A stretch of DNA of 64,000 nucleotides from Penicillus capitatus (lineage: Eukaryota > Plantae > Chlorophyta). Every line of letters starts with the position of its first letter. The stretch's first letter is position 1. This document shows, one piece after another, positions 6,201 to 26,291 of the stretch. The stretch covers positions 434,001 to 498,000 of the forward strand of contig OZ287703.1 of assembly GCA_965649825.1 (NCBI GenBank), read 5' to 3'. Both the position numbers and the translations under genes were made by a program. The notes under the pieces are model-generated. The model searched no databases and was not told where the DNA came from. It saw nothing but the letters and a program-made list of their open reading frames with translations.

Positions 6201-9200
6201 TGACTCGATCTTCTTTCTTGCTTTATCACTGGGTGAATCGCCAGCATGTCTAGTCAGTGGTCTCTTTTCTTGCTTATCCGTTTCAGACAACGCCCTCACC
6301 AGATCTCGCATCATGTCGCAGTTGATCTGATCTTCGTCTTGATGCAAGAGACGACAGAATGCTGTGACGATAGCCTCAGGATCACCAGAGCATAATTGCT
6401 TCACAGAGTCTCTCACACAGCTGCCGAGTATGGACAGTAGCATCTCCTCTCTGTTATTTTCGTTCAGTGATAAGGATTGCAATATGAATTCTCTGTGTTG
6501 GTGATCTTCTGGAAGCAAATCTGCAATGACTGTGTCGAGACTTGAACCAGCATCAGTCTTTAGGATACTCTCGACGATGCTTGCAATGAATCCAAAAGAA
6601 GCGATTTCTTCATCACTGGAGAGCATCAAACTCTTCAACAGGGTCACGATGTCGCAAAGCGTCGACTCTTGATCATCAAACAACGCTGTGATGGCCTCAC
6701 AACTGTTGTCAAGCTGGGTGGCACTGAAAGCATCAGGCAGGGCTGTTTTTATCACAGCGGCGGCGGCTTTCCACTGTTGTTTCTCTGTGCAGTCTGCATG
6801 CAACAGCATGTACATTGACTGAGCCACGGTTTGTATATCGACGGAAGCATTCGAGACTGCAGCCAGGGGAATGCATATCTCAGACATGTCGCTATGACCT
6901 CTCTCCTCGAAGTGATCCTTGAGTTTATCGAAGTAGTCTGCAAGTGTAGAGGATGGGCCAGCATTCCTTCTTGGTGCCTTTTCCAAGTGCTTCAGATGAT
7001 CAGCACAGAGCGAGACTGCCTCGTTAGGATCGCTGTCGAGAATACGACGTGCTAGTTCCGTCGTCACTTTCCACTCCTTCTGGAGGATTTCGACTTCGCA
7101 AAGCATCATCAGAAGAAAGGACTGTGCTGTGGATGGAGATGAGCTTATCTCTCTTAGAATGTCCAGATTTGGAAGACAGAAGGTTGTATTCTTGATAGCT
7201 AGCCCCGACCCGCTAGATTTCTTGCATGATTGCATCAGATTGGCCAATGTATTTGGTGTATCCGACACCGGAGCCACGATCGTCAACTTCTGATGCATCA
7301 ACTGACACTTTTCTGGTTCTTCGTGAACGAAAACGGCCTGTTCTGTCTGGAAGGTCAAGTCTTCCACTATCCACCCTTTCCCTTCTTTTGCTTGCACACA
7401 GATTTCAAACTGCTTCGAAGAGCGAAAGACTGTGGACACGTCATCCGATCCAAGAAACAGCGGCTCTAGATCTTTCTTCGGGCGTCCGCTTTTCCGTTCC
7501 GTCAGCGAAAGGATCTCAGTCAACTCCGACTGAGGGGCTTTGTTGAGAATCGAAAATTGACCAGTCGTGTTGATCTTGACATCTCTGCTCATGGTTTCTC
7601 CGGGTTTCACTGAACTCGATCGTACCCAACTCGTTGGAGTAATCTCCAGCTTCCCGGATGCCCATAAAAGATACACTTTGAAAGACAGTTTCTTTCCTGT
7701 GTCTGTGAGGAAAGTCACAGTGTGCTCTTGCTTCTTGAGCCGTCTCACTGTCCACTTCATTTCAACATCGATCTCTCCCTTTCCTTCGAAGCTGTAATGG
7801 GGATGATCAAAGGTGAAGTTGTCACTTTCTGGAGGATAAACAGTAACGAGAATATCGTCCCAGTTAATGAACTTGTTTCGGGCAGTGAGCTCCAGTGATG
7901 TCTCATTCTCCTTTACCATATGCACAAGCTGTTCTGTCGTAATCTTGAATTCAACAGTCTTCTGACAAATTTCTGGAACAGGATCTATCCACCTTCCACT
8001 GATCGTCAGCTGTCTTCGTTGGCATCCCTTTGCAGACACCGTTGTCTGAATCTTGAGGTTTTCTGAGCTGTCAGGACATCTCATCCACAAGTTTACTGGC
8101 ATTTCGCTGCCAACTGGTACACTTCCCGCAGAGGGTTCCGTCTTCAATGCATCTGATTTTGACTCAATGCTAAACACCACTGGAACGTCCCCCGTGTTCT
8201 TCACTCTGAGGCAACCTGTGGCTTTTTTGCCTTTCTTCACAGTTTGCATACCATACACACAGGCGACCTTCCCGTCCATTTCGTTCAACAGTACGAACTT
8301 TGGTCGACTGATCTTCGCTTTCAGCTTCAAGTGTTTGAAGCTCTGCACAGCTCCGATGACGACAGTGGATCCGACATCCTCCTCAGTGGCACTGGGTTTC
8401 AGTGTGAATTCCAGAGATTGTGTTTCTCTTGGCAGAAGCAACATCTTCTCTGGCGCCATGGAGAGTGCGCAACGGTTATTGTTGGATTGGATCTGGCCCT
8501 TGATCAACAAGGGCAGGTCTGTCACATTCCTGATGAAGATCTCGCGCTTCTGCTGTTCTGATCTCGGCAGCAAGACTCCAAAATCTATCTCCTCTGTACT
8601 GAGCTGTACAGCTAGTCTCTGGATCGTTGCACAAAGCTTGAAGCGATCGTTCATTTTTGTCTCAGGCGATTCGATTCGCCAACGCTCACAGATTCTTCCA
8701 ACTGCTCCTTCGGTGATGTGGAACGAGAACTGATGAGTTGATCTCCCGTAAAGACGGACCCTGCTCGGGGCCAGCACAGAGAAACCACTAGTAGATGATC
8801 CCTCAGCTGGAGCCACAGAGACAATCATTGTCGAAGCCGTTCGGTTCATCACTTCCACAACGCACACGTGTGCCCTCGATCCAGTCTTCTTGTCGTCTGC
8901 AGCGTACAGATGTGTTCCAAAATCAATACTGATGTGTTTGGGGTCGAGGAAGCAGACCCCTGTGTCTGACTGCGTGACAATGAGCTTGGCACTGTGGTGC
9001 AGTTTGGTCCCTGGAAGCAAGAGATTATCTTTCTCTTTCAGTCGCATAATTCTTTCATGTTCATCTCTGACATGCTCGAAGCACAACATGCATTGGACTC
9101 TGGCGTCAGCAAGGGACAGAGCAGAGTGGCAGCGGTTTTCAGCTCTGAAAGCAATGGCTTCTTTCTGATTGGATGACAAAGGGCTATCTCCCAGTATGAC

Positions 9201-12200
9201 TCTCCACTCTTGTAGTGCTTTGTCAAGGCTGATTAAGTCTTCCTTTGATGTGGCAGACAGAGAGGTTTTGCATAGTCCCAAAACAGCTGCATAGAGCAGT
9301 GAATCGAGACTTCTCTCTCCAAGCAACTGCATACCAAACACACTCCCTTTCATCTTCCGGAAAGAAGTTTGCATCTGATTCGTCCATACAGAGCTGATAT
9401 CTTCGTCAGAATAACTCGGATCAACAAGTCTCAGACTGCTCTCCTTGCAGTCCATCTCTTGTATCTTTCTCAAAGGTTCGCCCAGTTCTTTGATGAAACT
9501 GTTGATGAGTTTGATGTCCGGTTCGATGGACCAGTTGTTTTGTGAACGAGGCAAGTCTAACTGCATCTTGGACTGCAACTCGCAGATCTTGTTAATGGCA
9601 TCTTGCCACTGCTTAATTGATTGGGTGTGCGAACTCTTCTTAATGGCAGCGCGATCAGCATCCACCAACTTAAGAGACGCATCGATTTCTTTCTCCTTCT
9701 CCTTCAGAGATTTCTCCTTGGCAAGAAGAACACCCAGTTCTTGGTATTTCTGTTCATGGACGTCCAGTGCCGTATTCATCTGTTCAGTCAGTGTAATCAT
9801 CTGCTGCATGTTCTCTTTGGCTGCTTCTTCTTGGCAAGGTTTGATATTAAACGGCAATGGAGGGTCCTCTGCGATCGGCATCTCTATCTTGCTAGCTTCA
9901 AGGGTAACGCTCAGTGTTCGTCGAGGTTCGCAGATTTCCTGCACTTCAAATGTGTTGGAAGAGATGATATCCCCTAGCTTGAATCGCTTCGTGCCAATAG
10001 GTGCACTTTGAATGGTGAATTTTAGCGTCAGTTCAAACTTTTCCTCATCATCGACTTCATAGGGGGTAGGAAAACGCACTCCTGAACGGAGTCCGTAGAA
10101 AAAATCGATTGGTGGGCCGGTTCCTCCACTGGTGCAATCGATTTGAACTCTCACGTTGCCAAAGGAAGGAGAAGAATCCAAGTATACATGAGTGAGCTCC
10201 AGGCGAATTGTAGCACACTTCATCAATCCATAGTCAGCAAAATTGATTTCTGCGCACATTTGGTTTTGCAGAAGCCATTGTTGTTTCTTCGAAACGGCAC
10301 TCAACCGACTGCCGAGCATAGGCAAACCAGTTGTTGCTTTTCTATACCAATTCTGACTCTCTATGTTACAGTAACAGAGTCTTGCGTGTTTCCACAGCTG
10401 AGGGTAATCGAAATAGAGGTTTGATGCCTTCTCCAAAAGCTCATCACAGAGACTTCGTCGTTGATTCGTCACCTCAGACAGATCCCGATTCAACTTCCGG
10501 TGAGCATCTTCGCGTCTTCTCCGGCGCTTATCTATGAGCAGGACAACACTGTCTTCGTAATCTTGACGGTCAGACGCGTATTCTGCGGATAGCTTTGCTG
10601 CAGATCGAGCATCTTGAGAGAGTTGAGCCAATGCATCATCGTGGATCCAGCTTGTGATCTCTTCGTGGATTCCACTGCATAAATGATGCAGCATGCCACA
10701 CGCTTCGATCAGAAGTCCTTTTGTATTCTCGTCAATCTCGCGTGCTTCTTGAAGGAACACTTGTGCTTCCTTCATCATCAAAGCATGGTGTGCTTTCAAG
10801 AATTTGTCGAACTGAGTAATGGGAGTCCTTGCAAAGGAAAACGCTTGATAAGCATGCCAATTGTCCAGAAGTCTTTGCCTCGTCAGTGTCAGAATTTGGT
10901 CAAGAATAGTAGAAAGGGCACGAAGCTGCTTGAACTGTGCATTGCTGAACTCGATGTCTGAGAGATCCATTTCTCGATCGCGGAGACACTTTAGAAGTTT
11001 GCCAGTGTCTCGGAAATCGCCCAGCAGCAAGATCTCTTTTAAGGGAATCTCGTCAAATACAGCATCGGCAATTCGCTGACTGAGTGTTTCGGCTGTGGAT
11101 TCGTGTTTTGCTGGAGACTGCAAGAGACTAATAGATGCGGTTTCGTACCACCACTGTTCGCATATTCTTGCCAAGTAATCCGCCAAGTATGCTCTTGGGT
11201 TCTTCCTTCTCCGTAACATCACTTTGGTGACTTCAATGATCTGTGCAGAGAGCTCAGAGAATCTCTGGTGTGTATGCTCTACCGTCATTGCAGGAAGTGA
11301 TCCTCCACATATCTCCAGCAACTGCGTTACAAGGGGATCAAGATTCTCGCACTCTTCTGAGGTAAGGATAGGGACATTGTGTGTCTGAGAGATGTTGCGC
11401 AGTGCGCCCCAGAACTCCAGAATTCCGCGAACAAAGAGCTGTCCAGCGTAGGAAACGGACTGATAGAGTGGAGCATTCTCAGCAAAGCACTGTTCAAGGA
11501 TGTATGCGAGTTGGAAGGGATTCACAAGAGTGCCATCCACAGTTCCGACTTTGAGCGACGTCGTGTGACTTGCCCAGGAGCACGGGAGCAATTTCATCTC
11601 TGCCTTCAGCTCTTCTTCGTCTGAAGAGGGCATCGAAAAAAGGATCTTCTTCTTCACAGATTCTTCCAGCCTTGGCAGGAGTGTCTCTTCATACCAACTC
11701 ATCGGATACATTCTGTGAGCATAAGTGCAACAGCAGCCGATGGAATGCAGAATCAAGCTTCCGAGGTAAGCAAAATAGAGTGCTTTGAGACCATCATCTG
11801 CTCCACATTCCTCTCCGAGGCTTCTGCACTTTTGTTCCAAACGCAGTAAGTGTGTAGACAAGTTCTCTATCTCGGATCCATTGCAGTGATCATACATGCA
11901 CCTCTTCATGAGACGCACTGCAAGGTTCTCTGCTTCCTCGCCAACATTCATCAATGAAGAGATGTTCACTGCAAGAGATTTAGACGCAATGGAGATGCGT
12001 TGTAGTGTACGCTCGTTGCCAACAGATGCACATTTGCATGAGATCTCGATGGCTCTTCTAAATGGATCGTCATTGGACAACTTCGTCAGCTGTCCTTTGA
12101 ACTGTGCATACGACTGCGACCATTTCTCAAATTCTTCTTTGGCTTCTCTGCTCACGGTGATCTCACTGTCTATCAAATTCTGGATGTCAACGAGAACTGC

Positions 12201-15200
12201 CTGGCACAGTGGACGAGGTGCGTTCATCGAAACCGCACTCTCTTCTTTCCAGAGAGATTCCACAGCTTCCGACTGAACAATATCACAGAAGCACTGTAGC
12301 CCATGTGTCAACAGATCCCGAAGTTCATCGAGCAAATGTTGGCAAATCCAAGACTTTCGCGAATTTGCCGCTGCTGTTGCAAACTCCAGTTCTGATTGTT
12401 TCTGTTTCAATTGCTCAGTAGCTTCAGCGATGGCTTTCTTCAGGGAATTTCCGGGCTGTCCTTGTCTGTACATGTATGACGATGCGTACATTTCCTGCTC
12501 TGACTTTTCACGTTCAGCTGATGCCTGTAGCGTCGCGATATCCATCTGATATTGTCGTATGGATTCCTGTATGTCATCCACTCTCTGCTGCGCTGGTTCA
12601 GAAGACGACAGTTGAATTTCAAGTTTCAAATGACTGAAGTCTTGTTCCAAGAAGAGCAGCAAGGGTACCACAACAAACTGAAAAGCTGTGACGATTTCTT
12701 GGCCCGCATCGAAGCAATCATCATCCTCCCTCCAGAATTTTGCCATTTCGTCAACTCTCAGATGATCGAATTCTCTCAGAAAGTTGTCCATTATGCTGGA
12801 CTCAAGAGGGAAGACTGGAAGAGGCTTGCCATCTGCTTGAGTATACGCCAGAGAAGACAAGAATCCACAACACTGATTCCTGCCTGCGTATGAAGGTGCA
12901 GCAGAAGATGGATGCATCTTGGCCGACAATGCTGGATTCACTAGGCATTTGTATAGATAGTCTGAATCGACCGAGAATAGAATGGCAGCATCCTCTGCAC
13001 AAAGACCGGGACAAGCAAAAGACAATCCTGCTTTGCTCGAGGCTGCTTGCTCTTTCAAATACGAGTTCAACTGTTCGTTGCGGTGCTTTAGTGCTTCCAG
13101 AATGGAATAGGTGTGAGCCATTGAAAGGTGTTCATCGGCACACAGGGCTAAGACAGTTTCCAATGCTCTCTTTCCTTCGCCTGACGTCCATTTCGACAGC
13201 ATCGATGCGTATTCATCGCTGAGATATTCGATCCGCATCTGGATAAGCTCCCCGACGGCACAGCTCAGCAGTGCATCGTGTGACTCTCGGCTGGCTTGGA
13301 AAGCCAATCTTATCGACAGAGCCTCTGAAAAACTGTACAGATTCGACAGTTCCCTCAATCTATTGCAGCCTTCATCGGCATCCTGCTGCAGCCAACACTC
13401 ACGAACAGCCTCAATCGTCTCTTCCCAGAGCAATTGCTTCTGACGACTTGAAACCATGTGAATCAAGTCATCGACAGCTTTCTTGTGACCTGTCTGCTCA
13501 GGAATGGCCTGTTCTAGCTGGTGAATCAAGTCACCGAGCTGCTTTATCTTGACACGATCGTTCCCGGATAACTGTTGAGGTACAACCAGCGAGAGATCAA
13601 CGGCCTGCAAACAATGTGATCTCTTGGACAGCAAATCCTGCAACTCTTTTGACACGAAGCTCTCTTTGTTGTCCCTTTTTGCATCCGCTCTGTCCAGTTC
13701 CATTCGGAGATCGTTCAATCTCTTAAGGTATCTGGCTAAAGAGATGTCATTCAAGTCCTCCTTGTTTAAAGAGTCCAAAGCGCGAGCTGCCTTTACAGCC
13801 TCCTGCATGACAAACACCTGAGGCTGCGATGGACTCTTTGCTCTCTTCCAAAGCTCTTGGAACTGCTGTTTCAGCAATGCCACGTTGTTTGATTGTTCAG
13901 CCATCTTCGATTTCGATCTCGTGGATGTTCCAGCCGCCGTGTCCTGGCGTTGCGTGTTGAGATCATCTACATGCGCCAGATCTGCTTCTTTCTTCTCTTT
14001 CTTTAACTTTTCTGCGAGTTCGTTTTTTAGTTTGGAGAAGATATCGTCCAGATCATTATCTTGCAGTATCTGCACAGGGATCTTCACTTTGTCGATCAGC
14101 TCGTTCAGGGCCTCCTGCCAACGATCAGAGTCTTCAAACGATTGAGATCTGTCGAGCTTCATGTCGCCTTTGCCGATCAAGAGGTCAACGAAGTAAGCAA
14201 CGGTCTCCGAGACAAAGAAGCAGATGTCGTTGCACTTCTTCCAGACATCTGTCTCGTCATAGTCCAGACATTGCTGTGCATACTGTATCAGGAATTTCTT
14301 GAGCTTAAGGATTCGTGAAATCATGTCCAGTGCAACCAACGCATCGCCAAATCTTTGGTTTATTTCATTAAGAATGATAGAGATCCAGGAGGTTAGATCA
14401 TTGACTGGGCAATCCTTCAGTTCTTCGGTCATGAGTTTTCTGAAACTAAAGGCAATGGATGCGGACTCCCAGCCAAAGGCAGATATTCTTTGCTTGACAG
14501 AATGAAGCTTTTCTTTCACTTTCCGTTCTTGAGCGGCTTGTTTTCCAAGATCAAACAGATTAATCTGAGAAGAGAGTGAGCTTCTGACATCTGCTAATCC
14601 GTTTTTATGAGCTCGAACAAGGCAAGCATCCACCTGAGTCAAGCAATAAAGCAGACTGTTCTCTTGTTCAGTGGAATAGGAATCTATTTCGGTCAAGTAA
14701 GAATTCATCTGTTTTTCCAGACTAAAGACGAGCTGCTTTGGAACAGTAGATTTCTTCCCACTTTTTGCAGCTGCTCTTCCATAACCAGCCAGAGTGCAGA
14801 GACAAGAGATAAGCGTGATGCCGAGACTGGACAGGCGCTGTTTAGATGAAGAGTCAACAGACAGCAGTTCCTCTTCGTCAAAGGAAAAGCTGTAGCTGTC
14901 TTCATGATTCGTCGTCCATTGTCTGATCCATTTTCTGGTAGATGAGCGTTCTTTGGTCCATGTGTAATGCAGCACACTCACACGTGTCTTCACAGAGTCG
15001 GCACCAGATGCTTCTTTTTCGAAAAGCACTAGAGAAACCAGATCAGACAGGCTGGTGCCTAAGTCGAGGTCGCCGACTAAAAGAGCAGCACTGGCAGGAA
15101 CACCTTCCTCGAAGATCTCCCTGTCCAAATTCTCTTGGGAGCATCTCACAATCTTATATGGGATGTCGATTTTGACAGAAGACTCGAAGAGAGCAATCCA

Positions 15201-18200
15201 GGGTAGGCAGAATTCACTCTTGGCAATACTCTGAGTAGAGCGACGGAGACGATTGAAGAGTTCATGACAGTTCCTGATGTCTCCTTTTTCTAATTCGTGA
15301 TTCGTGCTTCTTCTCTTATCTTCGAGTAGGTAAGACATGATGTCGATGTGGAATTCGACCGCAGTATTCAATTCATCTGATAATGCAAAACTGCTATCTG
15401 ATGATCGCAGTACAAGGTCGAATTGTTCCACAGCTGAATGCACCAACTTGTCATCTCCATCTTCGTCATTTGCTTCGGGTGCGCTTGAAGTCGATGGACC
15501 CGAAGTATTTGAAGCACCTCCTGTAAAGAACTGATATGTTTTCTGTATTCCTGCTTGGACCATTCGACCACCAGCCTTTACTACATTGCTGGCTCTCCAT
15601 AGAGCTCCTTCGTTTTGAAGTGGCAGCTTGGCGAGTAACTGGTAGATCTTTCGCAAGATTCTCAGTCTGCTGAGATTCTTCTGGACATCTAGGATCTCCA
15701 ATGCGCAGAAATCTTCATGCGCAGGGACCAGCAAGCCTTCAGGAAGAAGCAGCGTGGTCTTCCAATCCAATGCGCTCAACGCAAAAGCAATACCAGTTCT
15801 GTTTCTCTCAGCTGTCGATGCATCTGTACTCCTCATCAATCTGACGATGGAACGAGAGAGCTTGGTGTCCGACTCGCAGATGACTGCCGACAGCCTCTTC
15901 TGGAGATTGTACTTGACAGCTCGATCTGTGCTGCGACTCAAGTGTTTCTCCAATACACCAACCTCTTCTCCAAAAACCTCTTTCTCCAAAGGAAAGAAGC
16001 AGCACAGCAGATGCTTGATCTGGGAGATCTTCTGAAAAAGCTCTCTGACGCGCTCGAATTCTTGGTTGCGGTTTCTGAACTGCACGTCAAGGATGCAGAA
16101 CACAGCGTCCAGCACAGAGCACATATCTTCGAGAAAGGCTTTCCTCAATTTCCAGTCTGCGAACGTGGACTGTGATATGAATTCCTTCGTCTGTGAGATC
16201 AGTCTCTCTGGATTCTGACAGAAGTACTTCAGAATCTTCTCCTCTTTTTCTGAAATGTCTTTGAAATACTCGGACAGCAGTCCTCCATGGTCTCGGCACA
16301 GCTGGACGACTTCTGGAACAGTGCAAACACCTTCAACGATATCGACTGCGTTTTCTGCTTCCTGTGGGTGCAGACGGCAGAAGTAGTCCTTGATGGAGAC
16401 TGCCAGAGATCTGGAGGCTTCTGCATGTAGGTGGGCATTCTGCATGTGCTTCAGCAGATGCTTCATGCACGCACGCAACAACGATGCAAACACGAACTGA
16501 AGGTCTCTGCTCTCCTTCTGGAAGGGAGTGAGAGCATCTCTGCCACTGCTGACGCAGTAGAACTTGTGGAGGGGAAGCGATGACGTGTCTACGCAAGACT
16601 CGTGAATGGCCTGCTGCAGTCTCTTCAGATCCTCATTCGTCTCGACGATGGCTGCATACACTCGCCACAATCCCCACACGACTGCGTTGAACAGAGGCTC
16701 TCCCCTTTCCAGCCAGGTGCGGATGACAGAAAGGGCCTGCTGCAGCATCCTGAAGCTGATCTTGGAATCGCGTGTGAGGGCGATCCGAGACGTCTGCACC
16801 AGTTGCCTGACCCTGGCATGGAAGGCCACGGCGAGAATGGCGGCCACACTGCCGCCTTCGACGGATCTGAGTGCTTCCGAGGCGATCTCGACCGTTTCAT
16901 GGCTCTCCAGCAGGCGCACGTCTGGATCAAGCACATCTCCGTCGATCTCGGGCAGCCAGATCTTGATCATTCTGTTCAGCAGCGGGTTGGAGAGTCCGAA
17001 GGTGTTGATCTTCTTCCTGTCTGCCGTCGCAAAGATGCGGGTGGTGGGATGGATGCCGTCGCCGGGCTTCAGCTCCTCGCCCTCCGAGTGCTCGTATAGG
17101 CTGAGGAACGGGGTCTCCTCGAACAGGGACAGCAGTCGCTCGATCACGTCCGGCGATGCCGCATTGATGTTGTCGAAGAGGACGAACGACCCTGACTTCA
17201 GCGCCTTGATCATATCAGACTCCACGAACTTGAAGACGATCGAGGAAGAGGCATCCCCAGAGGAGATCGCGCTTTCCTTGAGCTCGTCTGCCGCACGCAC
17301 CAGCGACTGCCACTTCGTCAGCTTGCATCCCTTGAGAGTCTCGAGCGCAAGCTGCACGCGCTCGACAACCTGCTCCATTTCCTGGGGCGTGCCAGTCTCG
17401 GCGCCCTCTGTGTAGCAGGCCTGCATGGCTCCGTAGAATTCGGCTCTCCTCTTCTGCGATAACTTCCCTGCTATCCTGAGTCCGAGCCTCGCCGCGTCGT
17501 CTCTCAGTCTGAACACCTTCTTCGACAGCTCGGATGCGACGTTGCTAGCGGAGACGGGGAGCCACTGTCCGATGAGGTCGGACACTTCGAAGTCCCGGTG
17601 CAGGGACAGTACCAGCAGAGGGACGCCAGCGAGGGATGCCAGTTCCCTCACGAGGGAAGTCTTCTTGGAGCAGGTGGGTCCCTCCAGGAGCACCGCTCTC
17701 TGCGACTGGCTGGCCGTCGCCAGCAGCTCCAGCTGCCTGATGGTCTTCACCGTGTGCACCAACGATCCCTGAGACGCGCGAGCTTCGTGCTTCTCCATGT
17801 AAACGTTCCCGATCCGGACGAGGTCTCCCACAGACAGGTCGATGGACGGGCTGTCGCTCTGCTCCAGTTCCATCTGAGGCGGCTTGACGACTTCGTCGAT
17901 GGTGCGCTGGATTTGCTCTTCGGCGGATCGGTTGTCGAACCGGTGCTTGAACACCAGCTGCAGGGCCTTGCGGATGACGCTCGTGACCACTGGCCTCTTG
18001 TCGAAGCTCTCCTCGCTCTGTTCGGTATCGTCGTCGCAGGCCATCAGTCTGTGGTGGGAGATCTGCGTCTCGATGTTCCCTGCCACGATGTCGTGGACGG
18101 ACTTCAGGTCCCTCAGGTTCAGCTTGTGCTTGCGGTTGGCTCCCTGGATCTCGCCCTTCTCAACCGACTGCTCGACCTTCTTGTAGACGTCGAACACGTG

Positions 18201-21200
18201 CTGCAGGTCTTCCTCTCTCACGAGCCCTTTCTCGATGAGACCCTCGAACTGCTTTCCCAGGATCTGCTTGAGGTCCTCGCTGTCGTAGCCCTCGATCTGG
18301 ACGACCGTGAACGTGTTCTTGATGGACCTCGACAGCTTCGCCCTTCCTCCGCCCTCCGCCGCGGGATTCATCGTGGCAAAGATGCGAGTTCCGCGCACAG
18401 CGACGGGCTTCGAATCCAGCTTTCCAGGGACAGAGAAGCCCTCTGCCTCTGCAGACCCGTTGAGCAGCGGGACGAGGGATTCCAGCACCTGGGCCGGCAG
18501 CAGATTGACCTCGTCCAGCAGAATCCACCTCTGCGATTTCAGGGCCTTCAGCAGCTTTCCGTCCCTCCACTCGAAGACCCTGCGGTTGTCGATGTACATC
18601 GGCATCACCGACCCGTACAGCTGCTCGACGGATGTGTCGCTGGAGCAGTTGATGCGCTCCAGATCGGTTCCGAGGAATTTGGCCACCTGGGTGATGACGC
18701 CAGTCTTTCCTATTCCAGGAGCTCCTTCGAGCAGCAGGGGCGAGTTCGTGCAGATGGAGGCAAATATGCGAGCCATGTTCTCCCGCACGGAAGCAGTCAC
18801 GCAGAGGGACAGTTCGGGAAGCCGATCGTCACCGGACGGCGTCTCCAGTGTCCGAGGCACACTCAGAGACAGTCCTTGCCCCATCAGCGAAACCACCCTG
18901 CCAGCGTCGCCAGCCGTCTCCTCGATTTCGAACGGATTCCTTTCCACAGGAAGCTCGAGGTCGGACTTCAGCTTCTCGAACTCGTCCGAGAAGATCTTCT
19001 GAAGCACCTCGTTCTGGATGTCGGTTGGATACCCTGTTAGGTAGAAGAACTTGGCTCCCAGCATGCATCTCTTCCGGATGCTCAGGTGTCTCGGATGCGC
19101 CGTCACAAACGCGATCCATCTCAGAATCCTCCTGAAGTCCTCGCAGGGATGCTCTGGGTCATCGCCGACGACCTCGGATCGGACACCCTTGATGCTGCCC
19201 ATCACGTAGGGCAGGGACTCCACTTCAGTGGCATGAAGCGTGCGTCGAAGCTTCTCCTCTGCGATGGACATGATGTCAGGGGTGCCATAGACAGGGACTC
19301 GAATCTGCGTCAGTCTGCTTTGCGTGGCAGCGCTGAGCTGCGGCTTCTTGTTCTCTGAATCCAGGTGCGAAGTGGCAATGAAGCAGTATCCCTTCTTGGG
19401 GATCTCCATTTCTGCAGCCACTCTGGCTGAGAAGGACACGTCTTCCGGAATGCTGAACGTCGGATCCACTTCCAGCGCGCTGTTCAGTCTTTCAGTCACT
19501 GCCTGTGCACAGAGATCGTAGTCTTCCACGACAAACGCGTGCTCCATGGTGATTGCTTTGACGAATGGGCCGTCTCTGAACAAGAAACAGGGCTTGGTGT
19601 TTTGTGCGTCGCGAGAACGGACGAACATTCTCAGCTGCTCCAGTCGACGTACCATTCTCTGCACAGCAGCAGGGATCTCTTCTCCCAGAATTTCGTTTAC
19701 TAACTGCATGATCATCGCAAGAATCTCATCGAGTGAACGCAAGTAATCATCCTCTGTTTGCTCATCTATCCTTATCGCTAGATAATCCGCGTCATCAACA
19801 GCCATACCAGCGAAAGTGGGCTCTAATGTTGGCACCTGTTCTTGTACGTTATGTCCGGTTTCTTCGTTATACCCGATCTCGTCTGGCAAACCATAGACAG
19901 AATCACTTTCTTCGGCTTGATCGAAATCATATGCTGCTGCGTAATCATCTGACATATCGTCATCCTCTGTCTCTTCTTCAAGAAGGTGCGAATCAGTAGG
20001 AGCTCCGTTGGTATTCATGGATGGTGATCCAGAGGCACTGCGGTTATCCTTTTCTACGTTTACCCAGTCAGTAGATACGCCAGGTGAATTTTCTTCCTCG
20101 TCACATTCTTTTGTTGCATCAAACTGATATACTTTGCTGTAGCTATCTTCCGAAACAGCGTCATTGATACTCTCGTTCGATACAGGGGGAGATTTGGCAT
20201 TGCATTCCTGCTCTGCATCAACTGCTGCATCATCACTTGGTGTTTTGTTTTCCTGTTGCCAGTTCGACTTCTGTCCACTAAGAACATCAATCAGTTGCCT
20301 GATTATTGTCACTAGCTGTTTCTGAAGGTTTTGCATTCGGGCAATGTTCAGAGATGTCCATGGCGATTCTGTCCTTGATGTCGACTGACAAATCAGGCAT
20401 GAGAGGACAAAGGCTCCAGTTGAAGCAAGGTTTTCAAGAACCTCCACGAAGGACACCAATTGCACTTGGCCAATGAGGTCTGTCGCTTCAGACTGCGAAG
20501 TCAAGTGGACGCGCTGCACGCTCTCCGTCATCCCCGACAGCTCCAGCCACGTCTTGATGAGTTCCGTCTTGAAGGCAGATTCTCCGAAGAGGAGCACTGG
20601 CTCGTTGGCCTTCAGAGCAAAAGCCAGATCGACCAGCTTGTCCTGGAAGACGGCAGGAGGACCATTCCCAGAGAGACTGTCCCTCCAAAGCGGACTGTTG
20701 TCGAGCTTGAATCCGTGGAAGTGGACGTGGAGCTTTCCTTGGAAGAAGCTCACGCCTTGGCGTTCCCGCTTGACGTGCTTCCGTGCGCAGGCCTCTGCCT
20801 CAGTGACGCCGCCGGATCCGAAGCTGGACTCGATCAGTTGCATCAGCCTGGATGTCTCCTCTGTCGTGGTCGCCCGAGGACCCAGCAACGACATCGCCGT
20901 CGCCGCCCAAGTCACTCTCTGCCGCCCTTCGTCCTTCAGCATCTTGTATCTGCGCACGATCTTGACGATGTCTCTCATAGTCAGACGGAGTCCGTCGGCC
21001 GATGCGAAGTAGAGCTCCGCCAGAGCCCTGGAATCCATCTCCTCCGCGATGCCCTCGTATCGTCCGCCTCTGAACTTGTCTCTGACGATCTCTTGCAGCT
21101 CGTCCCGGGGGAAGTCCTCCACGTCGACTGCCAGGAAGCGGTTCCGCACGGTGATCGGCAGCTGCTTCCTGCCGTCGTTCCCGCCGCGAGACGGATTCTG

Positions 21201-24200
21201 GGTGGCGAAGAACCTGAAGTCCGGATGGACGCTCACCCTCATGTCGCTCCCGGGAATCTGGACGGTGCAGTTCCCCTCCAGGAACGGCATCAGAGCAGCG
21301 ATCACGGCGACGGGGGCCAGATTGAACTCGTCGGAGATGAACCAGTCGCCGCCCTCCATCGCCTGGACGAGGATCCCCTTCTGGAAGGAGAATCCGCTGT
21401 CCGACGGGATCCAGGTTCCGAAGTAGTCCTGGATGGTGGTCGTGTCGCTGTTGCTCAGCACCCTCACCGACTTGTCGACGCCTCCGAATCCCTTCAGGCC
21501 CTGCACCAGAGACGTCTTCCCGACGGCCGGCTTTCCTTCGAGCAGCACCGGCTTGTTGACAAAGGCACCCAGGAGCACCGCCTGCGCGTGCGCCTTCCTC
21601 GACTCGGTGAGCACCAGATCGGAGCTCTTCTCGAAGCGATCGAGCAGTCTCAGTTGGCCGAGCGCATCGCTCGGACATCCCATCTCGGCACACAGAGAGC
21701 GCCTCAGGTCGCCGTCCCTCATCTGGGCGGCGAACGCGACCGTCATCGCGCAGTGCAGGGCGACCTGGTCTTCCACCTCCGGCCTCCGGATCATCAGCAC
21801 GGTCGCGACGTCGATCAGGGTGGCAAAATCCCTGAAGGACACGAACATCTGGGTGCTCTCCGACACGAAGCGTCTGATCCTCAGACAGTAGTCCGAGATC
21901 GCGTTGAGCGATGCCTCGCAGCGATCCCTCGGCAGACAGCAGCGGACCATCGCCTCCAGCGCCCCGCGGAACTCGTCGTCCGGTCCGCATGCGGGATCGT
22001 CGATGTGGATGGTGACGAAGCGGTTGAACAGGGCGGCCGTGAGCTCCTTGGACAGGCTGTCCATTCCCCTGGCGGCGACGCCCTTGGGCGTGAAGGTGGC
22101 GATGAACTGGAAGCCTCTGGCCGGTCCAGGAGTGCTCGACCACGTTCCGTCCGCAAGCACGCGACACCTCAGCGCCTCCGTGTCTCCCCTCTCTGTCAGG
22201 CACAGCACCTTGGGGGACTCCAGCACCGGATTGATCCTCTCCTGCAGGACCGGCTCGGCCTGGCCGATGTTGTCCACGATGCAGACGCTGCCGTCTTTAA
22301 AGGCCCTGGTCAGCGGACCGTCCCTCCACTGCACGATGCCCTCGCCGACGGGACTGCTGCTCGGCAGGCACTCTCCGAGCATCGCGGACGGCTCGCTCTC
22401 CTGAGTAAGGGTGACCTGCTCGTAGTGGTTTCCCAGGAGAAAGGCGATGACCTTTCCCAGACAGGTCTTGCCTGAACCGGCTGTTCCCTCTATCAGGACG
22501 GGCTGCTCGCTGCGAACGGCCTCCGCCACGGAGACGAGGTGCTGGCACATCTGATCGCTGAGGACGACGGGCATCTCGGGAACGGACGACGTCATCGGTG
22601 GCACATCCGCGATACCGAGGTCGAAGTGCTGCGCGAAGACGTCGAAGACGTCGCTCCTTGCCTGGTCGTGTCTGATCCTTGAGCAGTATATCTCGGTTCC
22701 CAGCCGTCCCAGTCCTGTCCAAGCGTCGGTTCCCAACAGGCGATTCTCCAAGGCGCCTGCGATCCACTTGGCCAGCCAGGACTCCGAGAACGTGGTGTAG
22801 ACGCCGAACGTCTTCGTGAATTCGGCACTCTGGATCTTCCTCAGCACCGCTCTGTGGACGGCGGCGCATGCATCGAACGCCTTCCTGGCATCCTCGTCCG
22901 GAAACGGCTCGCTCGAGAAGTGGGTTGTCCAGAACTGGTCCACGAGTGTGACGTCCTTCTTGAGACATGGTCCCTGGATCCTGGCGAACCTCTCGATCGC
23001 GTCTTCCAGTCTGGGCCCCTCGGAGCTGAAGGTCAGTTTGCGTTCGCCGATGACTTTCTGGACCAGCTGCCGTCCGTCGCCTCGAAAACGGCATCCGTAG
23101 ATCAGCCACGCGTGGTCGCCCAGCTTCTCTTCTGCCTGGACGAGTTCCTCTTCGGCCAGAACCATGTCCGTCCACATCAGCAGCTCGCGGTTGGTGATCG
23201 TCGCGTAGCTTCCCTTCTCGGAGCAGCCCTCTGCGATCCTCTCTCTGACGTCGCAGTGGAAGTCCGTCATCTGTTTAGCCAGTTTTTGAATCAGCTCTGG
23301 GTTGTTGTCTCTTCCCTCGGCGATCTTCTTCTCGACGATCTCCCTCCACTCGTCTCTGGGGAGCTCCTTGAAGTGCATGATGGAGAACTGGGACATGAAG
23401 GCGTCGCTGAGGCGCTCCCTCTTGCCCGCCTGCCAGGGGTTCTGGGCGGCAAACAGGCGAAAGTCTGGGTGCTTCTTGATGAGGGTGGTGGAGGACAGGG
23501 CGGAGCTCTGGTCGCAGACGGTTATCTCTCCGGACTCCATCGCATCGATGACGACCTTCAGAGCGCCCTCCTCGGCAAGGTTCATCTCGTCGAGCAGAAC
23601 CCAGACGCCGTTCTTGAAGCTGTCGGCAAACGGCTGGAGCTCCTGGACGATCTTGCCGCTGCTGTCTACCGTCACCTTGGCCAGGAAGTCCTCGGGAGTG
23701 AGGTTGGACGACATGTTGATCCGAACGAACTTCACTCCTCTGCGGCGACACACCTCCGTGAGTGTGGCTGTCTTCCCCACCCCGGTGGATCCGATCAGCA
23801 GAACAGGGTTGCCGTCGGCGACCACCTCCTGGATCATTGCGATGTTCTCTTCGGTCGTGGCTGTCAGGATCATGGATCTCTCTTTGGACTCGGCTGCACC
23901 GTCCTCTTCCTTTTCCTTGCACGGAGGCCTGTACGTCTGGAGCACGGCGTTGCGCAGGTCGCTGCTCTCCAGAGACAGGTTGGGTCGCTCGAAGGTCTCG
24001 ATCATCCTCCTCAGGTCCGTCAGAGATGCAGTCTCTGACTGGATGCCTTGGCCAGCTGGGAATCTCGCGGAGGAGAAGGGTGGTATGGCGGCGTAGTTGT
24101 CGGATGGACGCGCTTCCACTTTGTGGACTAGAGCGTTTCGGCCATCGAGGATAAAGCAGATCAGCTCCATCAAGGAATTGATTCTGCCTTTCCCATCGCA

Positions 24201-26291
24201 TTCACGCATCAGGCCAAAGAGCTCGCCGAGTGCAGAGAAGAGAGCAGCCTTGAGTGGTTCTGTTCCTTCGCTGGAAGGATCGGTGAGATTGGTCAGCAGG
24301 TGGGAGAAGAATTTGACATCTTCAATGCTCTCTATCCCAGCTGCCGCATTGCATGCTGCTGCAATGACTTCTTTTAGAAGGTCTGCGGACTGGTCAGCCA
24401 ATACGGCTACAAATTTAGCGAAATCTTCTGCTGAGATTTTGGCGCACGCCAACTGATCAATGTCAGACATCAAGGCGTCTACTGCACACTGGAGATCGTC
24501 TCCTTTAAGCAGACAGATCAGATGAACCACAGATAGTGCGGCATCATGAGCAAAGTCTCCTTTAATTGAATGTGACAGCATTGTCTTGCACACTTTGCCC
24601 CAATCCGTGTCTGATGTCTGGATGGTGTTGCGAACTGCTATACGCCCAGCATCAGATTGAAGAAGAGAGACTGCAGCACTCAGCAACCATTCAATGTCTT
24701 CATTCTCTGCCTCCTCACACAGTTTCATAACAGCAGTCGCATCCTCCGGTTGTAGATTTCTTGTCCATTTATCGATCATTCCATGTGAACAGAACCCATT
24801 GGATAGACAAACAAATGACTCATAGTCCAAGTCGGCTAGCTTCAACAACTCGGAAAAAACAGAAAAAGATGTTCTTCGATCGATATAATCGGAAATGGTT
24901 TTAACGGCGGAATGCATTCGGAAGTTGGAATCCTGCCCTTTATCCAATTTTGTATTAGATTGAATGGAGAGAAATGTCCTGAGCAAAGATTCAACAAAAA
25001 AACTGTTCATGTTGGAGGCTGTCACAAGCTTAGCCTCGTCTGAAAAGAAAAGAGAGAGTAAATGCAATCGCTCACAGATCCATTGTTTCTTTTCTTGGTT
25101 TTCGTTGTCATAGCAACTAATATGATGAGAGCAGGCGTCAAAAAGATGCGAGGTTATGTTGAGAACGTCACTCCTAACACAAAAAGAAACCATCGTGCAA
25201 ATGTCGTCAAATGACAATATAGAACTCGCGCGGTACAACACAGGAGAGGCAAAGAGAAACTCAATGGTATCGATGAGAAGTATCGCATTGGTACGGTTCC
25301 CAAATGTCAATCCATTAAGAACTAAGGCAACTGCATCTGTGCCTTCTAGAGACATAAGTGTGCTTAGAACGGCATCGAGTTGGGGTTTTTTGAAAGCCGA
25401 ATCGCCCTTGTACAATTCTATTAGGTTGCTAACGAAAGGATGCATTGTGTTTTCCATTGTATGGGCGGCGCTCAAGGCAGACAGAAGTATTCGATCGGGT
25501 CGCACACGGGGACCAAGTTTCTTTGCTTGGTCGAGGTTGTCAATTCTGCCGTCGCTCCAAATGACCTCTGTCGCTTCCTTCACGTCAATTTCTTTGAGCC
25601 CCACGGCACCGGCAATTTCGGGGAATGTCGCTGTCACTGTTATGGAATCGAAGAACATCGACAGAAGCTCTCGAGAAGTGAGGACGCTGTTTACGATGTC
25701 TGGCGTCCATTTACTGTCTCTCATTTTGGGAATCGGAAACAAGCTGCCTTCATGGGCATCGGAGTCGTCACAGACGATTTTCTGCAGGAGGCAGAGGATG
25801 TCGTCGATGTCATCGCCAGACAATCCTCCCATTCCAAGCACATCCAGAAGGTATGCCCCGTTAGGCTTCTTACATTCATTCGTCGGTTTCAGATTCGGAG
25901 ACTTTTTGAGCATGAACACAGCTGTCACCCCAAGCTTCGAAGCATCGTACTCTCTTTCGCGAAAGAGGATGTCGTAGACGGTCTGTCTATTTTCAGTAGA
26001 TGCCTTTTCCATAAACCAGTTCAGAATCTTTGCCAGTGGACCACATGCGGCGTTCTTTGATTTGAATAGCCTGACGGCATACGCCTGAACGATACAGAAA
26101 AAGAAGATACTGCTGCCGTTTTTGGTGATGTCCGTCCCTTCCATCTCGACGGAACCCCGACGTATCATTGCATCGACTTCGCGGCGAACATCAATCAAAG
26201 CTCGGTCTTCTCCCATGCTTAACGAACGCTTCAACGCGTCTTGGAGCTGCCAGACCCCAATCCATTTGTTTTGCTTTTCTTCTTTTTTTGG
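220..26291 (-). CDS. Gene A: giant midasin/Rea1-like AAA+ protein (6 AAA modules, Ig-like repeats, 4 VWA domains), about 8,600 aa, spliced at the 3' end
   Basis: The 8233-aa ORF (1533-26234) continues through four GT-AG introns (1516-1562, 1140-1192, 897-949, 394-446) that keep the frame and join the downstream VWA ORFs; stop TAG at 220-222 (...AIFLGHL*). Main exon is 1563-26291 (24,729 nt, open from an acceptor-like tgtctttag). Six Walker A/B pairs are visible. The segment before VWA2 (LENILPQNRFTRKRADIQGPSIHLPGFIKHIV...YSVALLLDISASM) resembles the midasin pre-MIDAS motif. The true 5' exon is unresolved (candidate ATGs at 26333 and 26393). Confidence 0.93.
300..3480 (-). other. Four tandem VWA/MIDAS domains at the C-terminus of gene A
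   Basis: VWA1 WCIVVDNSGS..QGT..IVDG; VWA2 VALLLDISAS..LST..ITDG; VWA3 ICFALDCTGS..VAYKDYGD..GGTDTPED..IGDAPGHG; VWA4 FIFCLDESGS..VIQFDD..GNT..MSDG. VWA3 and VWA4 are reconstructed across introns. Confidence 0.88.
394..1562 (-). other. Four short spliceosomal introns in the 3' end of gene A (47, 53, 53, 53 nt)
   Basis: GT...AG boundaries at 1516-1562, 1140-1192, 897-949 and 394-446. Removing them restores one frame and continuous VWA motifs (EQIK|GISEH, DDR|YPEG, NCE|VNSRLGFHFIFCLDESGS, RLQ|EMAAAA). Confidence 0.88.
7290..8970 (-). other. Array of about five Ig-like beta-sandwich modules (ASH/PapD-like) in gene A
   Basis: Beta-rich units of about 100-110 aa with motifs such as ISIDFGTHLY..VEVMNRT, EEIDFGVLL..IFIRNVTDLPL, GCLRVKNTGDVPVVFSI and GKLEITP..VKPGETMSRDVKINTTG. 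Boundaries are approximate. Confidence 0.62.
15670..19705. repeat. Inverted near-identical tract 2, left arm (pairs with about 48405-52440)
   Basis: The reverse complement matches gene B colinearly with a constant coordinate sum of 68109 (shadow ORF pairs 19324-19521/48588-48785 and 15808-16005/52104-52301). Only scattered substitutions by eye. Confidence 0.92.
16700..23900 (-). other. Six-module AAA+ ring of gene A (midasin/MoxR/dynein-related clade)
   Basis: Walker A/B pairs: GSTGVGKT/LLDEMN; GTAGSGKT/IVDNIG; GKPAVGKT/ISDEFN; GESAFKT/VVEDYD; GAPGIGKT/LLDEVN; GPTCSKKT/LFDNIN. Sensor-I motifs FAAQNP, FATQNP, FATMNP. Inserts lie between Walker A and B in modules 4 and 6, as in Rea1. Confidence 0.92.
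20450..24420. repeat. Inverted near-identical tract 1, left arm (pairs with about 43900-47870)
   Basis: The reverse complement matches gene B with a constant coordinate sum of 68319 (the 671-aa shadow ORFs 20460-22475 and 45844-47859). Stretches of more than 100 nt are identical, e.g. 23750-23858 versus 44461-44570. Confidence 0.93.

What the first reader, a model, noticed from the sequence alone, without database searches (positions are those of the whole stretch)
16700..23900. Alternating active/dead ATPase sites with matching arginine-finger retention
Seen: modules 1, 3 and 5 have intact Walker A and DE Walker B. Modules 2 and 6 have DN instead of DE, module 6 has GPTCSKKT, and module 4 has GESAFKT/EDYD. 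The arginine-finger position is R in modules 2 (LFNRF), 4 (TQSRL), 6 (LLNRM) and 3 (VRNRF), but Q in module 1 (FMSQF) and T in module 5 (IKNTF). Gene B is the same. Established: the Walker B glutamate is needed for hydrolysis and the arginine finger acts in trans on the neighbouring module. Inference: the ring has three composite catalytic sites, with the even modules acting as arginine-finger donors. This pseudo-three-fold motor differs from the activity patterns known for dynein and RNF213.
Basis: partly seen in the sequence, partly recalled or inferred. Interest (0 to 1): 0.7.

Follow-up and report, generated by a model that had tools for sequence, protein, structure and literature searches.

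The report
Giant midasin-like ATPase, alternating active sites
Two neighbouring giant genes of a eukaryote (probably an alga) encode midasin-like molecular machines whose six-part ATPase ring alternates between catalytically complete and crippled parts, and about 55 relatives from algae, protists and rotifers share this pattern, marking an undescribed protein family that probably burns ATP at three sites.

Summary
Modules 1, 3 and 5 of gene A (window 26234-1533, minus strand, over 8233 aa) have intact Walker A, DE Walker B and sensor-1 Asn. Modules 2 and 6 have DN. Module 4 has a P-loop with a one-residue deletion plus ED. The finger column reads Q, R, R, R, T, R.

That column is the true arginine finger. 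Read on 106 true midasins, it reproduces the published Mdn1 description (two Arg in R2, R3, R4 and R6, one in R5, none in R1). In an AlphaFold model it lies between helix H4 and strand beta5.

The alternation is not chance. In 55 relatives no even module has DE, and the even-module fingers are Arg in 127 of 127 cases. Only odd-module fingers are ever lost: M5 always, M1 in the window's clade, M3 rarely.

The genes belong to an uncharacterised paralogue family of midasin. It differs from midasin (sites 2-5 active), dynein and RNF213. Three hydrolytic sites fed by even-module fingers is the best reading, but it is untested biochemically.

Caveats:
- Gene B is not independent evidence, because its ring was homogenised with A's by gene conversion.
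- Site 2 probably still binds ATP.
- The Q in module 1 is lineage-specific.

The parts
1533..26234 (-). Gene A: one 8233-codon ORF. Order of parts: N-terminal region of about 790 aa, six-module AAA ring, long helical region, ASH/Ig-like domain, short D/E-rich stretch, then vWA/MIDAS domains. It probably continues past the stop through a short intron.
16935..23858 (-). AAA ring of gene A (residues 793-3100), with six AAA_5 modules. This is the region of the finding.
   Evidence: Pfam AAA_5 x6 at E 4.6e-85, plus AAA_lid_7. phmmer to Rea1/Mdn1 structures, E about 1e-110. Foldseek to Rea1, dynein and Mdn1.
23355..23837 (-). Module 1. Walker A GSTGVGKT, Walker B DE, sensor-1 N. Finger column is Q (FMSQF, 23385-23399), which points into degenerate site 6.
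21987..22532 (-). Module 2. Walker A intact (GTAGSGKT), Walker B DN, sensor-1 T. Finger R (LFNRF, 22017-22031) is the donor to catalytic site 1.
21105..21572 (-). Module 3. GKPAVGKT, DE, sensor-1 N. Finger R (VRNRF) points into the ATP-binding but non-hydrolytic site 2.
19281..20627 (-). Module 4. P-loop with a one-residue deletion (GESAF-KT), Walker B ED, sensor-1 H. Carries an H2 insert of about 350 aa with an acidic stretch (residues 2073-2145). Finger R (TQSRL) is the donor to catalytic site 3.
18279..18767 (-). Module 5. GAPGIGKT, DE, sensor-1 N. Finger column is T (IKNTF). It is never Arg in the family and points into dead site 4.
16938..17723 (-). Module 6. P-loop GPTCSKKT (Gly replaced by Lys), Walker B DN, sensor-1 D, H2 insert of about 165 aa. 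Finger R (LLNRM) is the donor to catalytic site 5.
8373..8606 (-). HYDIN/CFA65/VesB-like (ASH-type) Ig-like domain in the tail of gene A.
   Evidence: Pfam PF22544, E 2.7e-07
4800..5000 (-). Short D/E-rich stretch (residues 7079-7145) ahead of the vWA domains.
3027..3467 (-). vWA domain 1 with MIDAS motif DNSGS (VVDNSGSM).
   Evidence: Pfam VWA, E 2.1e-11
2025..2348 (-). vWA domain 2 with MIDAS motif DISAS.
   Evidence: Pfam VWA_2
1516..1562 (-). Putative 47-nt GT..AG intron inside vWA domain 3 (DCTGS motif at 1599-1622). Splicing it out continues the vWA reading frame. Inferred from sequence only.
309..842 (-). A further vWA-like ORF downstream, probably a later exon of gene A (a fourth vWA).
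42055..63999 (+). Gene B: a paralogue in divergent orientation. Open for 7315 codons and running off the window. Ring at about 44461-51174 with identical motifs.
15654..24476 (-). Tract of gene A homogenised with gene B (20394-24476 and 15654-19704; partner tracts in B at 43840-47925 and 48405-52455). The M4 insert between them is not homogenised.

Best explanation
Genes A and B are members of an uncharacterised eukaryotic family of giant proteins related to midasin. Each is a single chain with a six-module AAA+ ring and a tail of several vWA/MIDAS domains. The family is a paralogue of midasin (Rea1/MDN1), not its orthologue.

The ring is built as three odd-even module pairs:
- The odd modules (1, 3, 5) carry every cis-acting catalytic element: P-loop, Walker B Asp-Glu, sensor-1 Asn, and an Arg in the post-sensor-1 loop.
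- The even modules (2, 4, 6) have lost the catalytic Glu but invariably keep the trans-acting arginine finger that completes the preceding odd site.

ATP hydrolysis is therefore predicted at three interfaces only: M1/M2, M3/M4 and M5/M6.
- Site 2 has an intact P-loop, DN like a Walker B trap mutant, and usually keeps the M3 finger. It most likely binds ATP without hydrolysing it and acts as a structural or regulatory glue.
- Site 4 has a P-loop deletion, ED, and no M5 finger. It is probably empty.
- Site 6 has DN, a P-loop that is often degenerate, and has lost the M1 finger in this clade. It is non-hydrolytic and, in this organism, probably empty.

By analogy with Rea1, ring movements would be passed through the long helical region to the MIDAS domains, which grip and pull on ligands.

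Shown here: motif content, its conservation, the finger position and direction, family membership, and purifying selection. Inferred: the actual hydrolysis pattern, nucleotide occupancy and the substrate.
For: - Motifs are present and aligned.
- Family-wide conservation in 55 sequences from Bryopsis, Mesostigma, Chlorarachnion, Ectocarpus, Epipyxis, Hondaea, bdelloid rotifers and environmental eukaryotes. Even-module fingers are Arg in 127/127 cases, no even module has DE, odd modules have DE in 131/135, and sensor-1 Asn is in all odd modules.
- The finger column is validated against Mdn1 genetics and against secondary structure in an AF2 model.
- Finger direction is n+1 to n.
- Homology to Rea1/Mdn1 rings (E about 1e-110).
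- The family is distinct from 106 true midasins, which are invariant ED / DE x4 / DN. Every module type forms its own clade, with SH-aLRT 95-99.
- Both genes are under purifying selection (omega 0.25-0.35) with 24.7 kb and 21.9 kb of uninterrupted frame.
- An odd/even dichotomy is independently visible. With motif columns masked, odd and even modules of both families separate on one branch, SH-aLRT 90. Large H2 inserts occur only in even modules in midasin and in this family.
Against: - There are no biochemical or structural data for any member.
- Motif competence does not prove equal use. Dynein has several competent sites but one dominant site.
- DN sites might retain slow hydrolysis.
- The finger part of the pattern is weaker family-wide, because M1 and M3 usually keep Arg although their target sites lack the Glu.
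- The ring as a whole was not modelled, and no finger-to-P-loop distances could be measured with the tools.
- Coexistence of a true midasin in the same genomes was not tested here.
Confidence: 0.7

Rival explanations
1. The ring is hierarchical rather than pseudo-three-fold. The three odd sites are motif-complete, but as in dynein one of them drives the cycle and the others are regulatory. The alternation would then reflect structural bookkeeping rather than three equivalent power strokes.
For: Dynein and Rea1 show unequal site contributions despite complete motifs (PMC5116814 and PMC6920918). The three even modules are not equivalent here. M2 has an intact P-loop and no H2 insert. M4 has a P-loop deletion and a 350-aa insert. 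M6 has a variable P-loop and a 170-aa insert. The three pairs are therefore structurally different.
Against: All three odd sites and all three donor fingers are kept with near-100% conservation across very distant eukaryotes. This argues that each is used.
Confidence: 0.2
2. The genes are the organism's highly divergent midasin orthologue, acting in 60S ribosome maturation.
For: The best solved-structure matches are Rea1/Mdn1. Databases label some relatives 'Midasin'. Both have the blueprint of a ring plus a tail plus a MIDAS domain.
Against: True midasins are invariant for DE in AAA2-5 and ED in AAA1 (106/106), and this feature is not met. The family's modules form separate clades. The protein is over 8233 aa with at least three or four vWA domains and an ASH domain, against about 4900-5600 aa with one MIDAS domain. 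The family is multi-copy, whereas midasin is typically single-copy (established knowledge). It occurs in rotifers, and animals carry MDN1 (established knowledge, not tested here).
Confidence: 0.05
3. The degenerate sites are decay in redundant duplicated genes, or chance, with no functional meaning.
For: The genes are recently homogenised duplicates. One related copy (P0002) has DK in M3 and looks truncated. A Bryopsis paralogue (P0006) has lost the Glu in all odd modules.
Against: The same substitutions at the same modules recur in 55 sequences across eukaryotic supergroups. Omega is 0.25-0.35. There is no stop in 8233 or 7315 codons.
Confidence: 0.02
4. The true trans-acting arginine is a different residue: the Arg about ten positions upstream in the post-sensor-1 loop (RERL, RKQL, RAKL). 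The finger bookkeeping would then be wrong.
For: That Arg alternates too. It is present in about 100% of odd modules and mostly absent in even ones.
Against: As a trans finger it would point only into the non-hydrolytic even sites, which makes no sense. In midasin it is Lys in the active AAA2 and AAA4. Mdn1 genetics identify the RxRF motif. The NorQ motif order places the finger after the post-sensor-1 loop (PMC13036017).
Confidence: 0.03

Closest known systems
Midasin (Rea1 in S. cerevisiae, Mdn1 in S. pombe, MDN1 in animals)
   Same: Six AAA_5 modules in one chain, collinear with Rea1/Mdn1 (E about 1e-110). Midasin-type lid. H2 inserts in even modules. The finger of module n+1 serves site n. 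Long tail ending in vWA/MIDAS domains preceded by an acidic stretch. DN in module 6.
   Different: Midasin has DE plus finger in AAA2-5 and ED with no finger in AAA1 (106/106). This family has DE only in 1, 3 and 5, DN in 2, ED plus a P-loop deletion in 4, and no finger in 5. It also has no large H2 insert in module 2 (the auto-inhibitory insert of Rea1), several vWA domains, an ASH/Ig-like domain, a much shorter D/E-rich region, over 8200 aa, and multiple copies per genome.
Cytoplasmic and axonemal dynein heavy chains
   Same: Single-chain ring of six AAA+ modules in which some sites hydrolyse, one site binds ATP without the catalytic Glu (AAA2), and others are dead. The AF2 model of M1-M2 superposes on dynein AAA pairs (TM up to 0.57).
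   Different: In dynein the competent sites are contiguous (AAA1-4) and the dead ones are AAA5-6, so they do not alternate. Dynein has no vWA tail, and its stalk and microtubule-binding domain are absent here.
RNF213 (mysterin)
   Same: A giant single-chain six-AAA ring with mostly degenerate sites, thought to act as a conformational switch.
   Different: Only the adjacent AAA3 and AAA4 are competent. The output is an E3 ligase module, not MIDAS domains.
F1/V1-ATPase alpha3beta3 and alternating AAA+ heterohexamers (Pex1/Pex6; MoxR-vWA pairs such as BchI/BchD, CbbQO, NorQD)
   Same: They work in a similar way: catalytic and non-catalytic sites alternate around a six-fold ring, with the non-catalytic partner donating the arginine finger (F1 alpha to beta). 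MoxR-type AAA is coupled to a MIDAS-bearing vWA partner.
   Different: These are separate polypeptides, and F1 is RecA-like, not AAA+. Here all six modules and the vWA domains are fused in one chain. This comparison rests on established knowledge and was not tested here.

Membership tests
Single-chain hexameric AAA+ ring proteins of the MoxR/dynein/midasin clade | Six tandem AAA+ modules of the AAA_5 type in one polypeptide | tested here: met
   Pfam AAA_5 x6. Six Walker A hits and six Walker B-to-finger hits in order. Foldseek to Rea1, dynein and Mdn1.
Midasin / Rea1 / MDN1 orthologous group | Ring homologous to and collinear with Rea1/Mdn1, with a midasin-type lid | tested here: met
   phmmer E 5e-110 to 5jcs/6hyp and 9e-109 to 6or5. 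AAA_lid_7.
Midasin / Rea1 / MDN1 orthologous group | Walker B pattern of ED in AAA1, DE in AAA2-5 and DN in AAA6, with fingers R2-R6 | tested here: not met
   The pattern is invariant in 106 midasins. The window has DE, DN, DE, ED, DE, DN and fingers Q, R, R, R, T, R.
Midasin / Rea1 / MDN1 orthologous group | Modules cluster with the corresponding midasin modules | tested here: not met
   Each family module type is its own clade, separate from every midasin module clade (SH-aLRT 95-99). One-to-one pairing is not resolved.
Midasin / Rea1 / MDN1 orthologous group | A single C-terminal MIDAS domain after a long D/E-rich region, with total length of about 4900-5600 aa | tested here: not met
   At least three or four vWA domains with DxSxS motifs, a D/E stretch of only about 66 aa, and over 8233 aa.
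Midasin / Rea1 / MDN1 orthologous group | Role in pre-60S maturation (binds the UBL domains of Rsa4/Ytm1) | not testable with these tools
   No functional data.
Undescribed 'alternating-ring' midasin paralogue family (defined here) | DE in M1, M3, M5; DN in M2, M6; ED plus a one-residue P-loop deletion in M4; no Arg finger in M5; invariant Arg fingers in M2, M4, M6; large H2 inserts in M4 and M6 only | tested here: met
   Genes A and B show every feature. Frequencies in 55 members are.
MoxR-vWA type AAA+/MIDAS partnership | MoxR-clade AAA+ modules functionally coupled to vWA domains with an intact MIDAS motif | tested here: inconclusive
   The domains are fused in one chain and DxSxS motifs are intact. 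Coupling itself cannot be tested.

The most novel reading that the evidence does not exclude
This is a previously undescribed, ancient and widespread eukaryotic family of mechanoenzymes of over 8000 aa. It would be the first single-chain AAA+ ring that works like F1-ATPase or Pex1/Pex6, with three hydrolytic odd sites alternating with three non-hydrolytic even modules that serve as arginine-finger donors.

It would also expose the origin of the midasin-type ring as a triplicated two-module (odd-even) unit. That dichotomy is still visible in midasin itself, in the module phylogeny and in H2 inserts found only in even modules.
Probability: 0.45. Interest if true: 0.75.

Novelty: new variant of a known kind. 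Interest (0 to 1): 0.55.

Why it matters
How single-chain AAA+ rings such as dynein, midasin and RNF213 divide labour among their six non-identical sites is an open mechanistic question. All three known cases have contiguous blocks of active sites. A natural, strongly conserved ring with strict alternation would be a new design point. It has three complete sites, each completed by an invariant finger from a crippled neighbour.

It would also give a ready-made test of whether such rings can run as a trimer of dimers. It points to an ancestral two-module repeat behind the midasin ring. Finally, it flags a large family of giant proteins carrying several MIDAS domains and an ASH domain. The family is found in algae, stramenopiles, rhizarians and rotifers, databases currently mislabel it as midasin, dynein or MoxR, and its cellular role is unknown.

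Tried and rejected
- **Bacterial giant gene.** Considered at first and rejected. All relatives are eukaryotic. The neighbouring genes are split (PARG in two ORFs). A GT..AG mini-intron continues the vWA frame.
- **Ring rotation relative to midasin** (for example M4 equivalent to AAA1, because both have ED). Rejected. The phmmer matches are collinear and H2-insert positions match M4/M6 with AAA4/AAA6.
- **One-to-one orthology of modules with midasin modules.** Not resolved on 115-129 columns.
- **Organism name.** The look-up of encoding contigs on P0001 failed (over 5000 aa). The closest named relative is Bryopsis sp. KO-2023, 44% identical over M1-M3.
- **Literature.** Searches for 'midasin-like', for midasin + RNF213 + VWA8, and for midasin + paralog + AAA+ + vWA found no description of this family. 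The 2002 midasin genomics paper was not held.
- **Rfam and tandem-repeat scans of the window.** Empty.
- **Finger-to-P-loop distances.** The structure tool returns no coordinates, so these could not be measured. Only secondary-structure position and fold matches were obtained.
- **Correlation between loss of the M1 finger and extra decay of site 6.** Only about two independent events, so no statistics are possible.

Full report
**What is there**

The window holds two very large genes in divergent orientation.
- Gene A is a single ORF of 8233 codons on the minus strand (26234-1533).
- Gene B is open for 7315 codons on the plus strand from 42055 and runs off the window.

Pfam finds the following in gene A:
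- six AAA_5 (dynein-related) modules
- a midasin-type lid
- an ASH/HYDIN-like Ig domain
- vWA domains at the C-terminal end

The reading frame stops inside a third vWA domain. A 47-nt GT..AG segment (1516-1562) would, if spliced out, continue that domain. A further vWA-like ORF lies downstream at 309-842. The 16 kb between A and B holds split ORFs of a microbial-type PARG and a RING-like protein. All relatives are eukaryotic. The window is therefore nuclear DNA of a eukaryote. The closest named relative of the protein is from the siphonous green alga Bryopsis.

**Checking the observation**

They fall into common columns when the six modules are aligned.

| Module | Walker A | Walker B | Sensor-1 | Finger column |
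|---|---|---|---|---|
| M1 | intact | DE | N | Q |
| M2 | intact | DN | T | R |
| M3 | intact | DE | N | R |
| M4 | GESAF-KT (one-residue deletion) | ED | H | R |
| M5 | intact | DE | N | T |
| M6 | GPTCSKKT | DN | D | R |

Gene B has the same letters, but this is not independent evidence.
- The two rings are 96.8-96.9% identical at the DNA level, against 67-85% in the flanks.
- dS is 0.07 in the ring, against 0.35-1.9 in the flanks.
- GC3 is 0.74-0.79 in the ring tracts, against 0.40-0.51 elsewhere.

This is the signature of recent GC-biased gene conversion. Omega is 0.25-0.35 throughout, so both copies are under purifying selection.

**Is the finger column the real arginine finger?**

I built two profile HMMs, one for the Walker A part and one for the stretch from Walker B to the finger. 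I read the same columns in 106 bona fide midasins. The results were:
- AAA2 xRSRF, AAA3 FRNRF, AAA4 LRNRF, AAA5 FVNRF, AAA6 MRNRx
- no Arg in AAA1

This reproduces the mutational description of S. pombe Mdn1 exactly. R2, R3, R4 and R6 have two arginines and R5 has one. The second arginine is the critical one. R1, B1 and B6 are not identifiable (PMC5116814).

In Rea1 the finger sits on helix H4 of module n+1 and completes site n (PMC6286127). An AlphaFold2 model of M1-M2 was built from a 7-sequence alignment (pLDDT 80, pTM 0.79).
- It puts Walker B at the end of beta3 and sensor-1 at the end of beta4.
- It puts the finger column in the short loop right after H4 and before beta5, in both modules.

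Foldseek matches the model to Rea1, Mdn1 and dynein motors. The MoxR protein NorQ has the same motif order: sensor 1, post-sensor-1 loop, then finger (PMC13036017).

**Is the alternation conserved?**

A length-restricted search found 14 relatives. An exhaustive HMMER search with M1-M3 added about 40 more. I assigned modules by nearest neighbour with all motif columns masked. The counts in 55 sequences were:

| Feature | M1 | M2 | M3 | M4 | M5 | M6 |
|---|---|---|---|---|---|---|
| Walker B | DE 46/47 | DN 47/51 | DE 48/50 | ED 37/41 | DE 37/38 | DN 32/35 |
| P-loop intact | all | 48/51 | all | 0/38 | all | 10/35 |
| Finger Arg | 39/48 | 51/51 | 47/49 | 41/41 | 0/38 | 35/35 |

- No even module has DE.
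- Sensor-1 Asn is present in every odd module and in few even ones.
- An Arg in the post-sensor-1 loop, about 10 residues before the finger, is present in essentially all odd modules and is not conserved in even ones.

The fingers that feed the three complete sites are therefore invariant. The only fingers ever lost are those that point into non-hydrolytic sites. The Q of module 1 is confined to the window's own clade; H occurs in two other sequences. Family-wide, only the M5 finger is missing.

Named members come from the following groups:
- green algae: Bryopsis and Mesostigma
- a chlorarachniophyte: Chlorarachnion
- a brown alga: Ectocarpus
- a chrysophyte: Epipyxis
- a labyrinthulid: Hondaea
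- bdelloid rotifers: Rotaria, Adineta and Didymodactylos

Their database names are 'Midasin', 'Dynein heavy chain', 'MoxR-like ATPase' or 'hypothetical protein'. The second refutation condition (random degeneration in homologues) is also not met.

**Relation to midasin**

The ring is clearly homologous to and collinear with Rea1/Mdn1, but the family is not midasin.
- Midasins are invariant for ED / DE x4 / DN.
- Every module type of the family forms its own well-supported clade.
- The architecture differs: over 8233 aa, several MIDAS-bearing vWA domains, an ASH domain, and only a 66-residue acidic stretch before the vWA domains.

Two further observations suggest that an odd/even repeat is older than the split of the two families.
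- With all motif columns masked, an ML tree places all odd modules of both families on one side of a single branch and all even modules on the other (SH-aLRT 90).
- Large helix-2 inserts occur only in even modules, both in Rea1 (AAA2, 4 and 6) and here (M4 about 350 aa, M6 about 185 aa).

The tree rests on about 115 columns and is unrooted, so this is a lead and not a result.

**Most likely mechanism**

Three hydrolytic sites lie at the M1/M2, M3/M4 and M5/M6 interfaces. Each is built from a complete odd module and the finger of a crippled even module.

| Site | Features | Predicted state |
|---|---|---|
| 2 | Intact P-loop, Asp kept, Asn in place of Glu, M3 finger usually kept | Binds ATP without turnover, like dynein AAA2 or the nucleotide-filled AAA1/AAA6 of Rea1 |
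| 4 | P-loop deletion, ED, no M5 finger | Empty |
| 6 | DN, P-loop often degenerate, M1 finger lost in this clade | Non-hydrolytic, probably empty here |

Force would be passed through the long helical region to the MIDAS domains, as in Rea1. The motif content, the direction of the fingers and the conservation are shown. Hydrolysis, occupancy, equal use of the three sites and the substrate are inferred.

The main rival is a dynein-like hierarchy, in which one of the three competent sites dominates. The rivals 'divergent midasin orthologue', 'decaying duplicate' and 'finger elsewhere' are each contradicted by tests above.

**Novelty**

Three literature searches and reading of the relevant papers found no description of this family or of an alternating single-chain ring. 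The known patterns are:
- midasin: sites 2-5
- RNF213: sites 3-4
- dynein: sites 1-4 (established knowledge)

Alternation of catalytic and non-catalytic sites, with finger donation by the non-catalytic partner, is familiar from F1/V1-ATPases and from heterohexamers such as Pex1/Pex6. The principle is therefore not new. Its occurrence in a fused midasin-type ring, and the family itself, appear to be. I rate it a new variant of a known kind, of moderate to good interest.

Noticed in passing
window 15654-24476 (gene A) and 43840-52455 (gene B): The AAA rings of the two divergent paralogues have been homogenised. Nucleotide identity is 96.8-96.9% and dS 0.07, against dS 0.35-1.9 in the flanks. GC3 is raised to 0.74-0.79, against 0.40-0.51. 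This is a textbook signature of GC-biased gene conversion confined to the motor. The acidic insert of module 4 lies between the two tracts and has escaped conversion.
   Followed up: yes
window 1516-1562 (minus strand) and 309-842: Gene A's ORF ends inside a vWA domain. A 47-nt GT..AG segment would splice it on to the rest of that domain, and a fourth vWA-like ORF follows. The real protein is therefore longer than 8233 aa. There is no RNA evidence.
   Followed up: partly
modules of gene A and of midasins (P0015-P0120): Odd and even AAA modules of both this family and true midasin separate on one tree branch, even with the catalytic columns masked (SH-aLRT 90). Large helix-2 inserts occur only in even modules. 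This suggests the six-module ring arose by triplication of a two-module unit.
   Followed up: partly
gene A residues about 939, 1687 and 2629 (RERL, RKQL, RAKL; roughly window 23415, 21170, 18345): An Arg in the post-sensor-1 loop, about 10 residues before the finger, is present in nearly all odd modules of the family and is not conserved in even ones. In midasin it is Arg in AAA3/5 and Lys in AAA2/4. Its role is unknown. It is a fourth cis-element that tracks catalytic competence.
   Followed up: partly
P0006 (Bryopsis sp. KO-2023, BSKO_02574) and P0002 (locus L002): One Bryopsis paralogue has lost the Walker B Glu in all three odd modules as well (EG, DN, DG), giving a ring with no catalytic Glu at all. 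P0002, a close relative of the window genes, has DK in module 3 and a broken gene model, so it may be a decaying copy.
   Followed up: no
window 31434-32041 (minus strand): A microbial-type poly(ADP-ribose) glycohydrolase (PF10021, E 1.7e-17), split over two ORFs by a probable intron, lies between the two giant genes.
   Followed up: partly
window 29067-30835 (minus strand): A Cys-rich gene with weak RING-like matches, spread over three adjacent ORFs. It is possibly a multi-zinc-finger E3 ligase next to the giant ATPase genes.
   Followed up: no
gene A residues 5877-5954 (window 8373-8606): An ASH/HYDIN-type Ig-like domain in the tail. This domain class is typical of ciliary and centrosomal proteins, and many, though perhaps not all, of the taxa carrying the family have flagellate or ciliated stages. 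This is a speculative hint to function.
   Followed up: no
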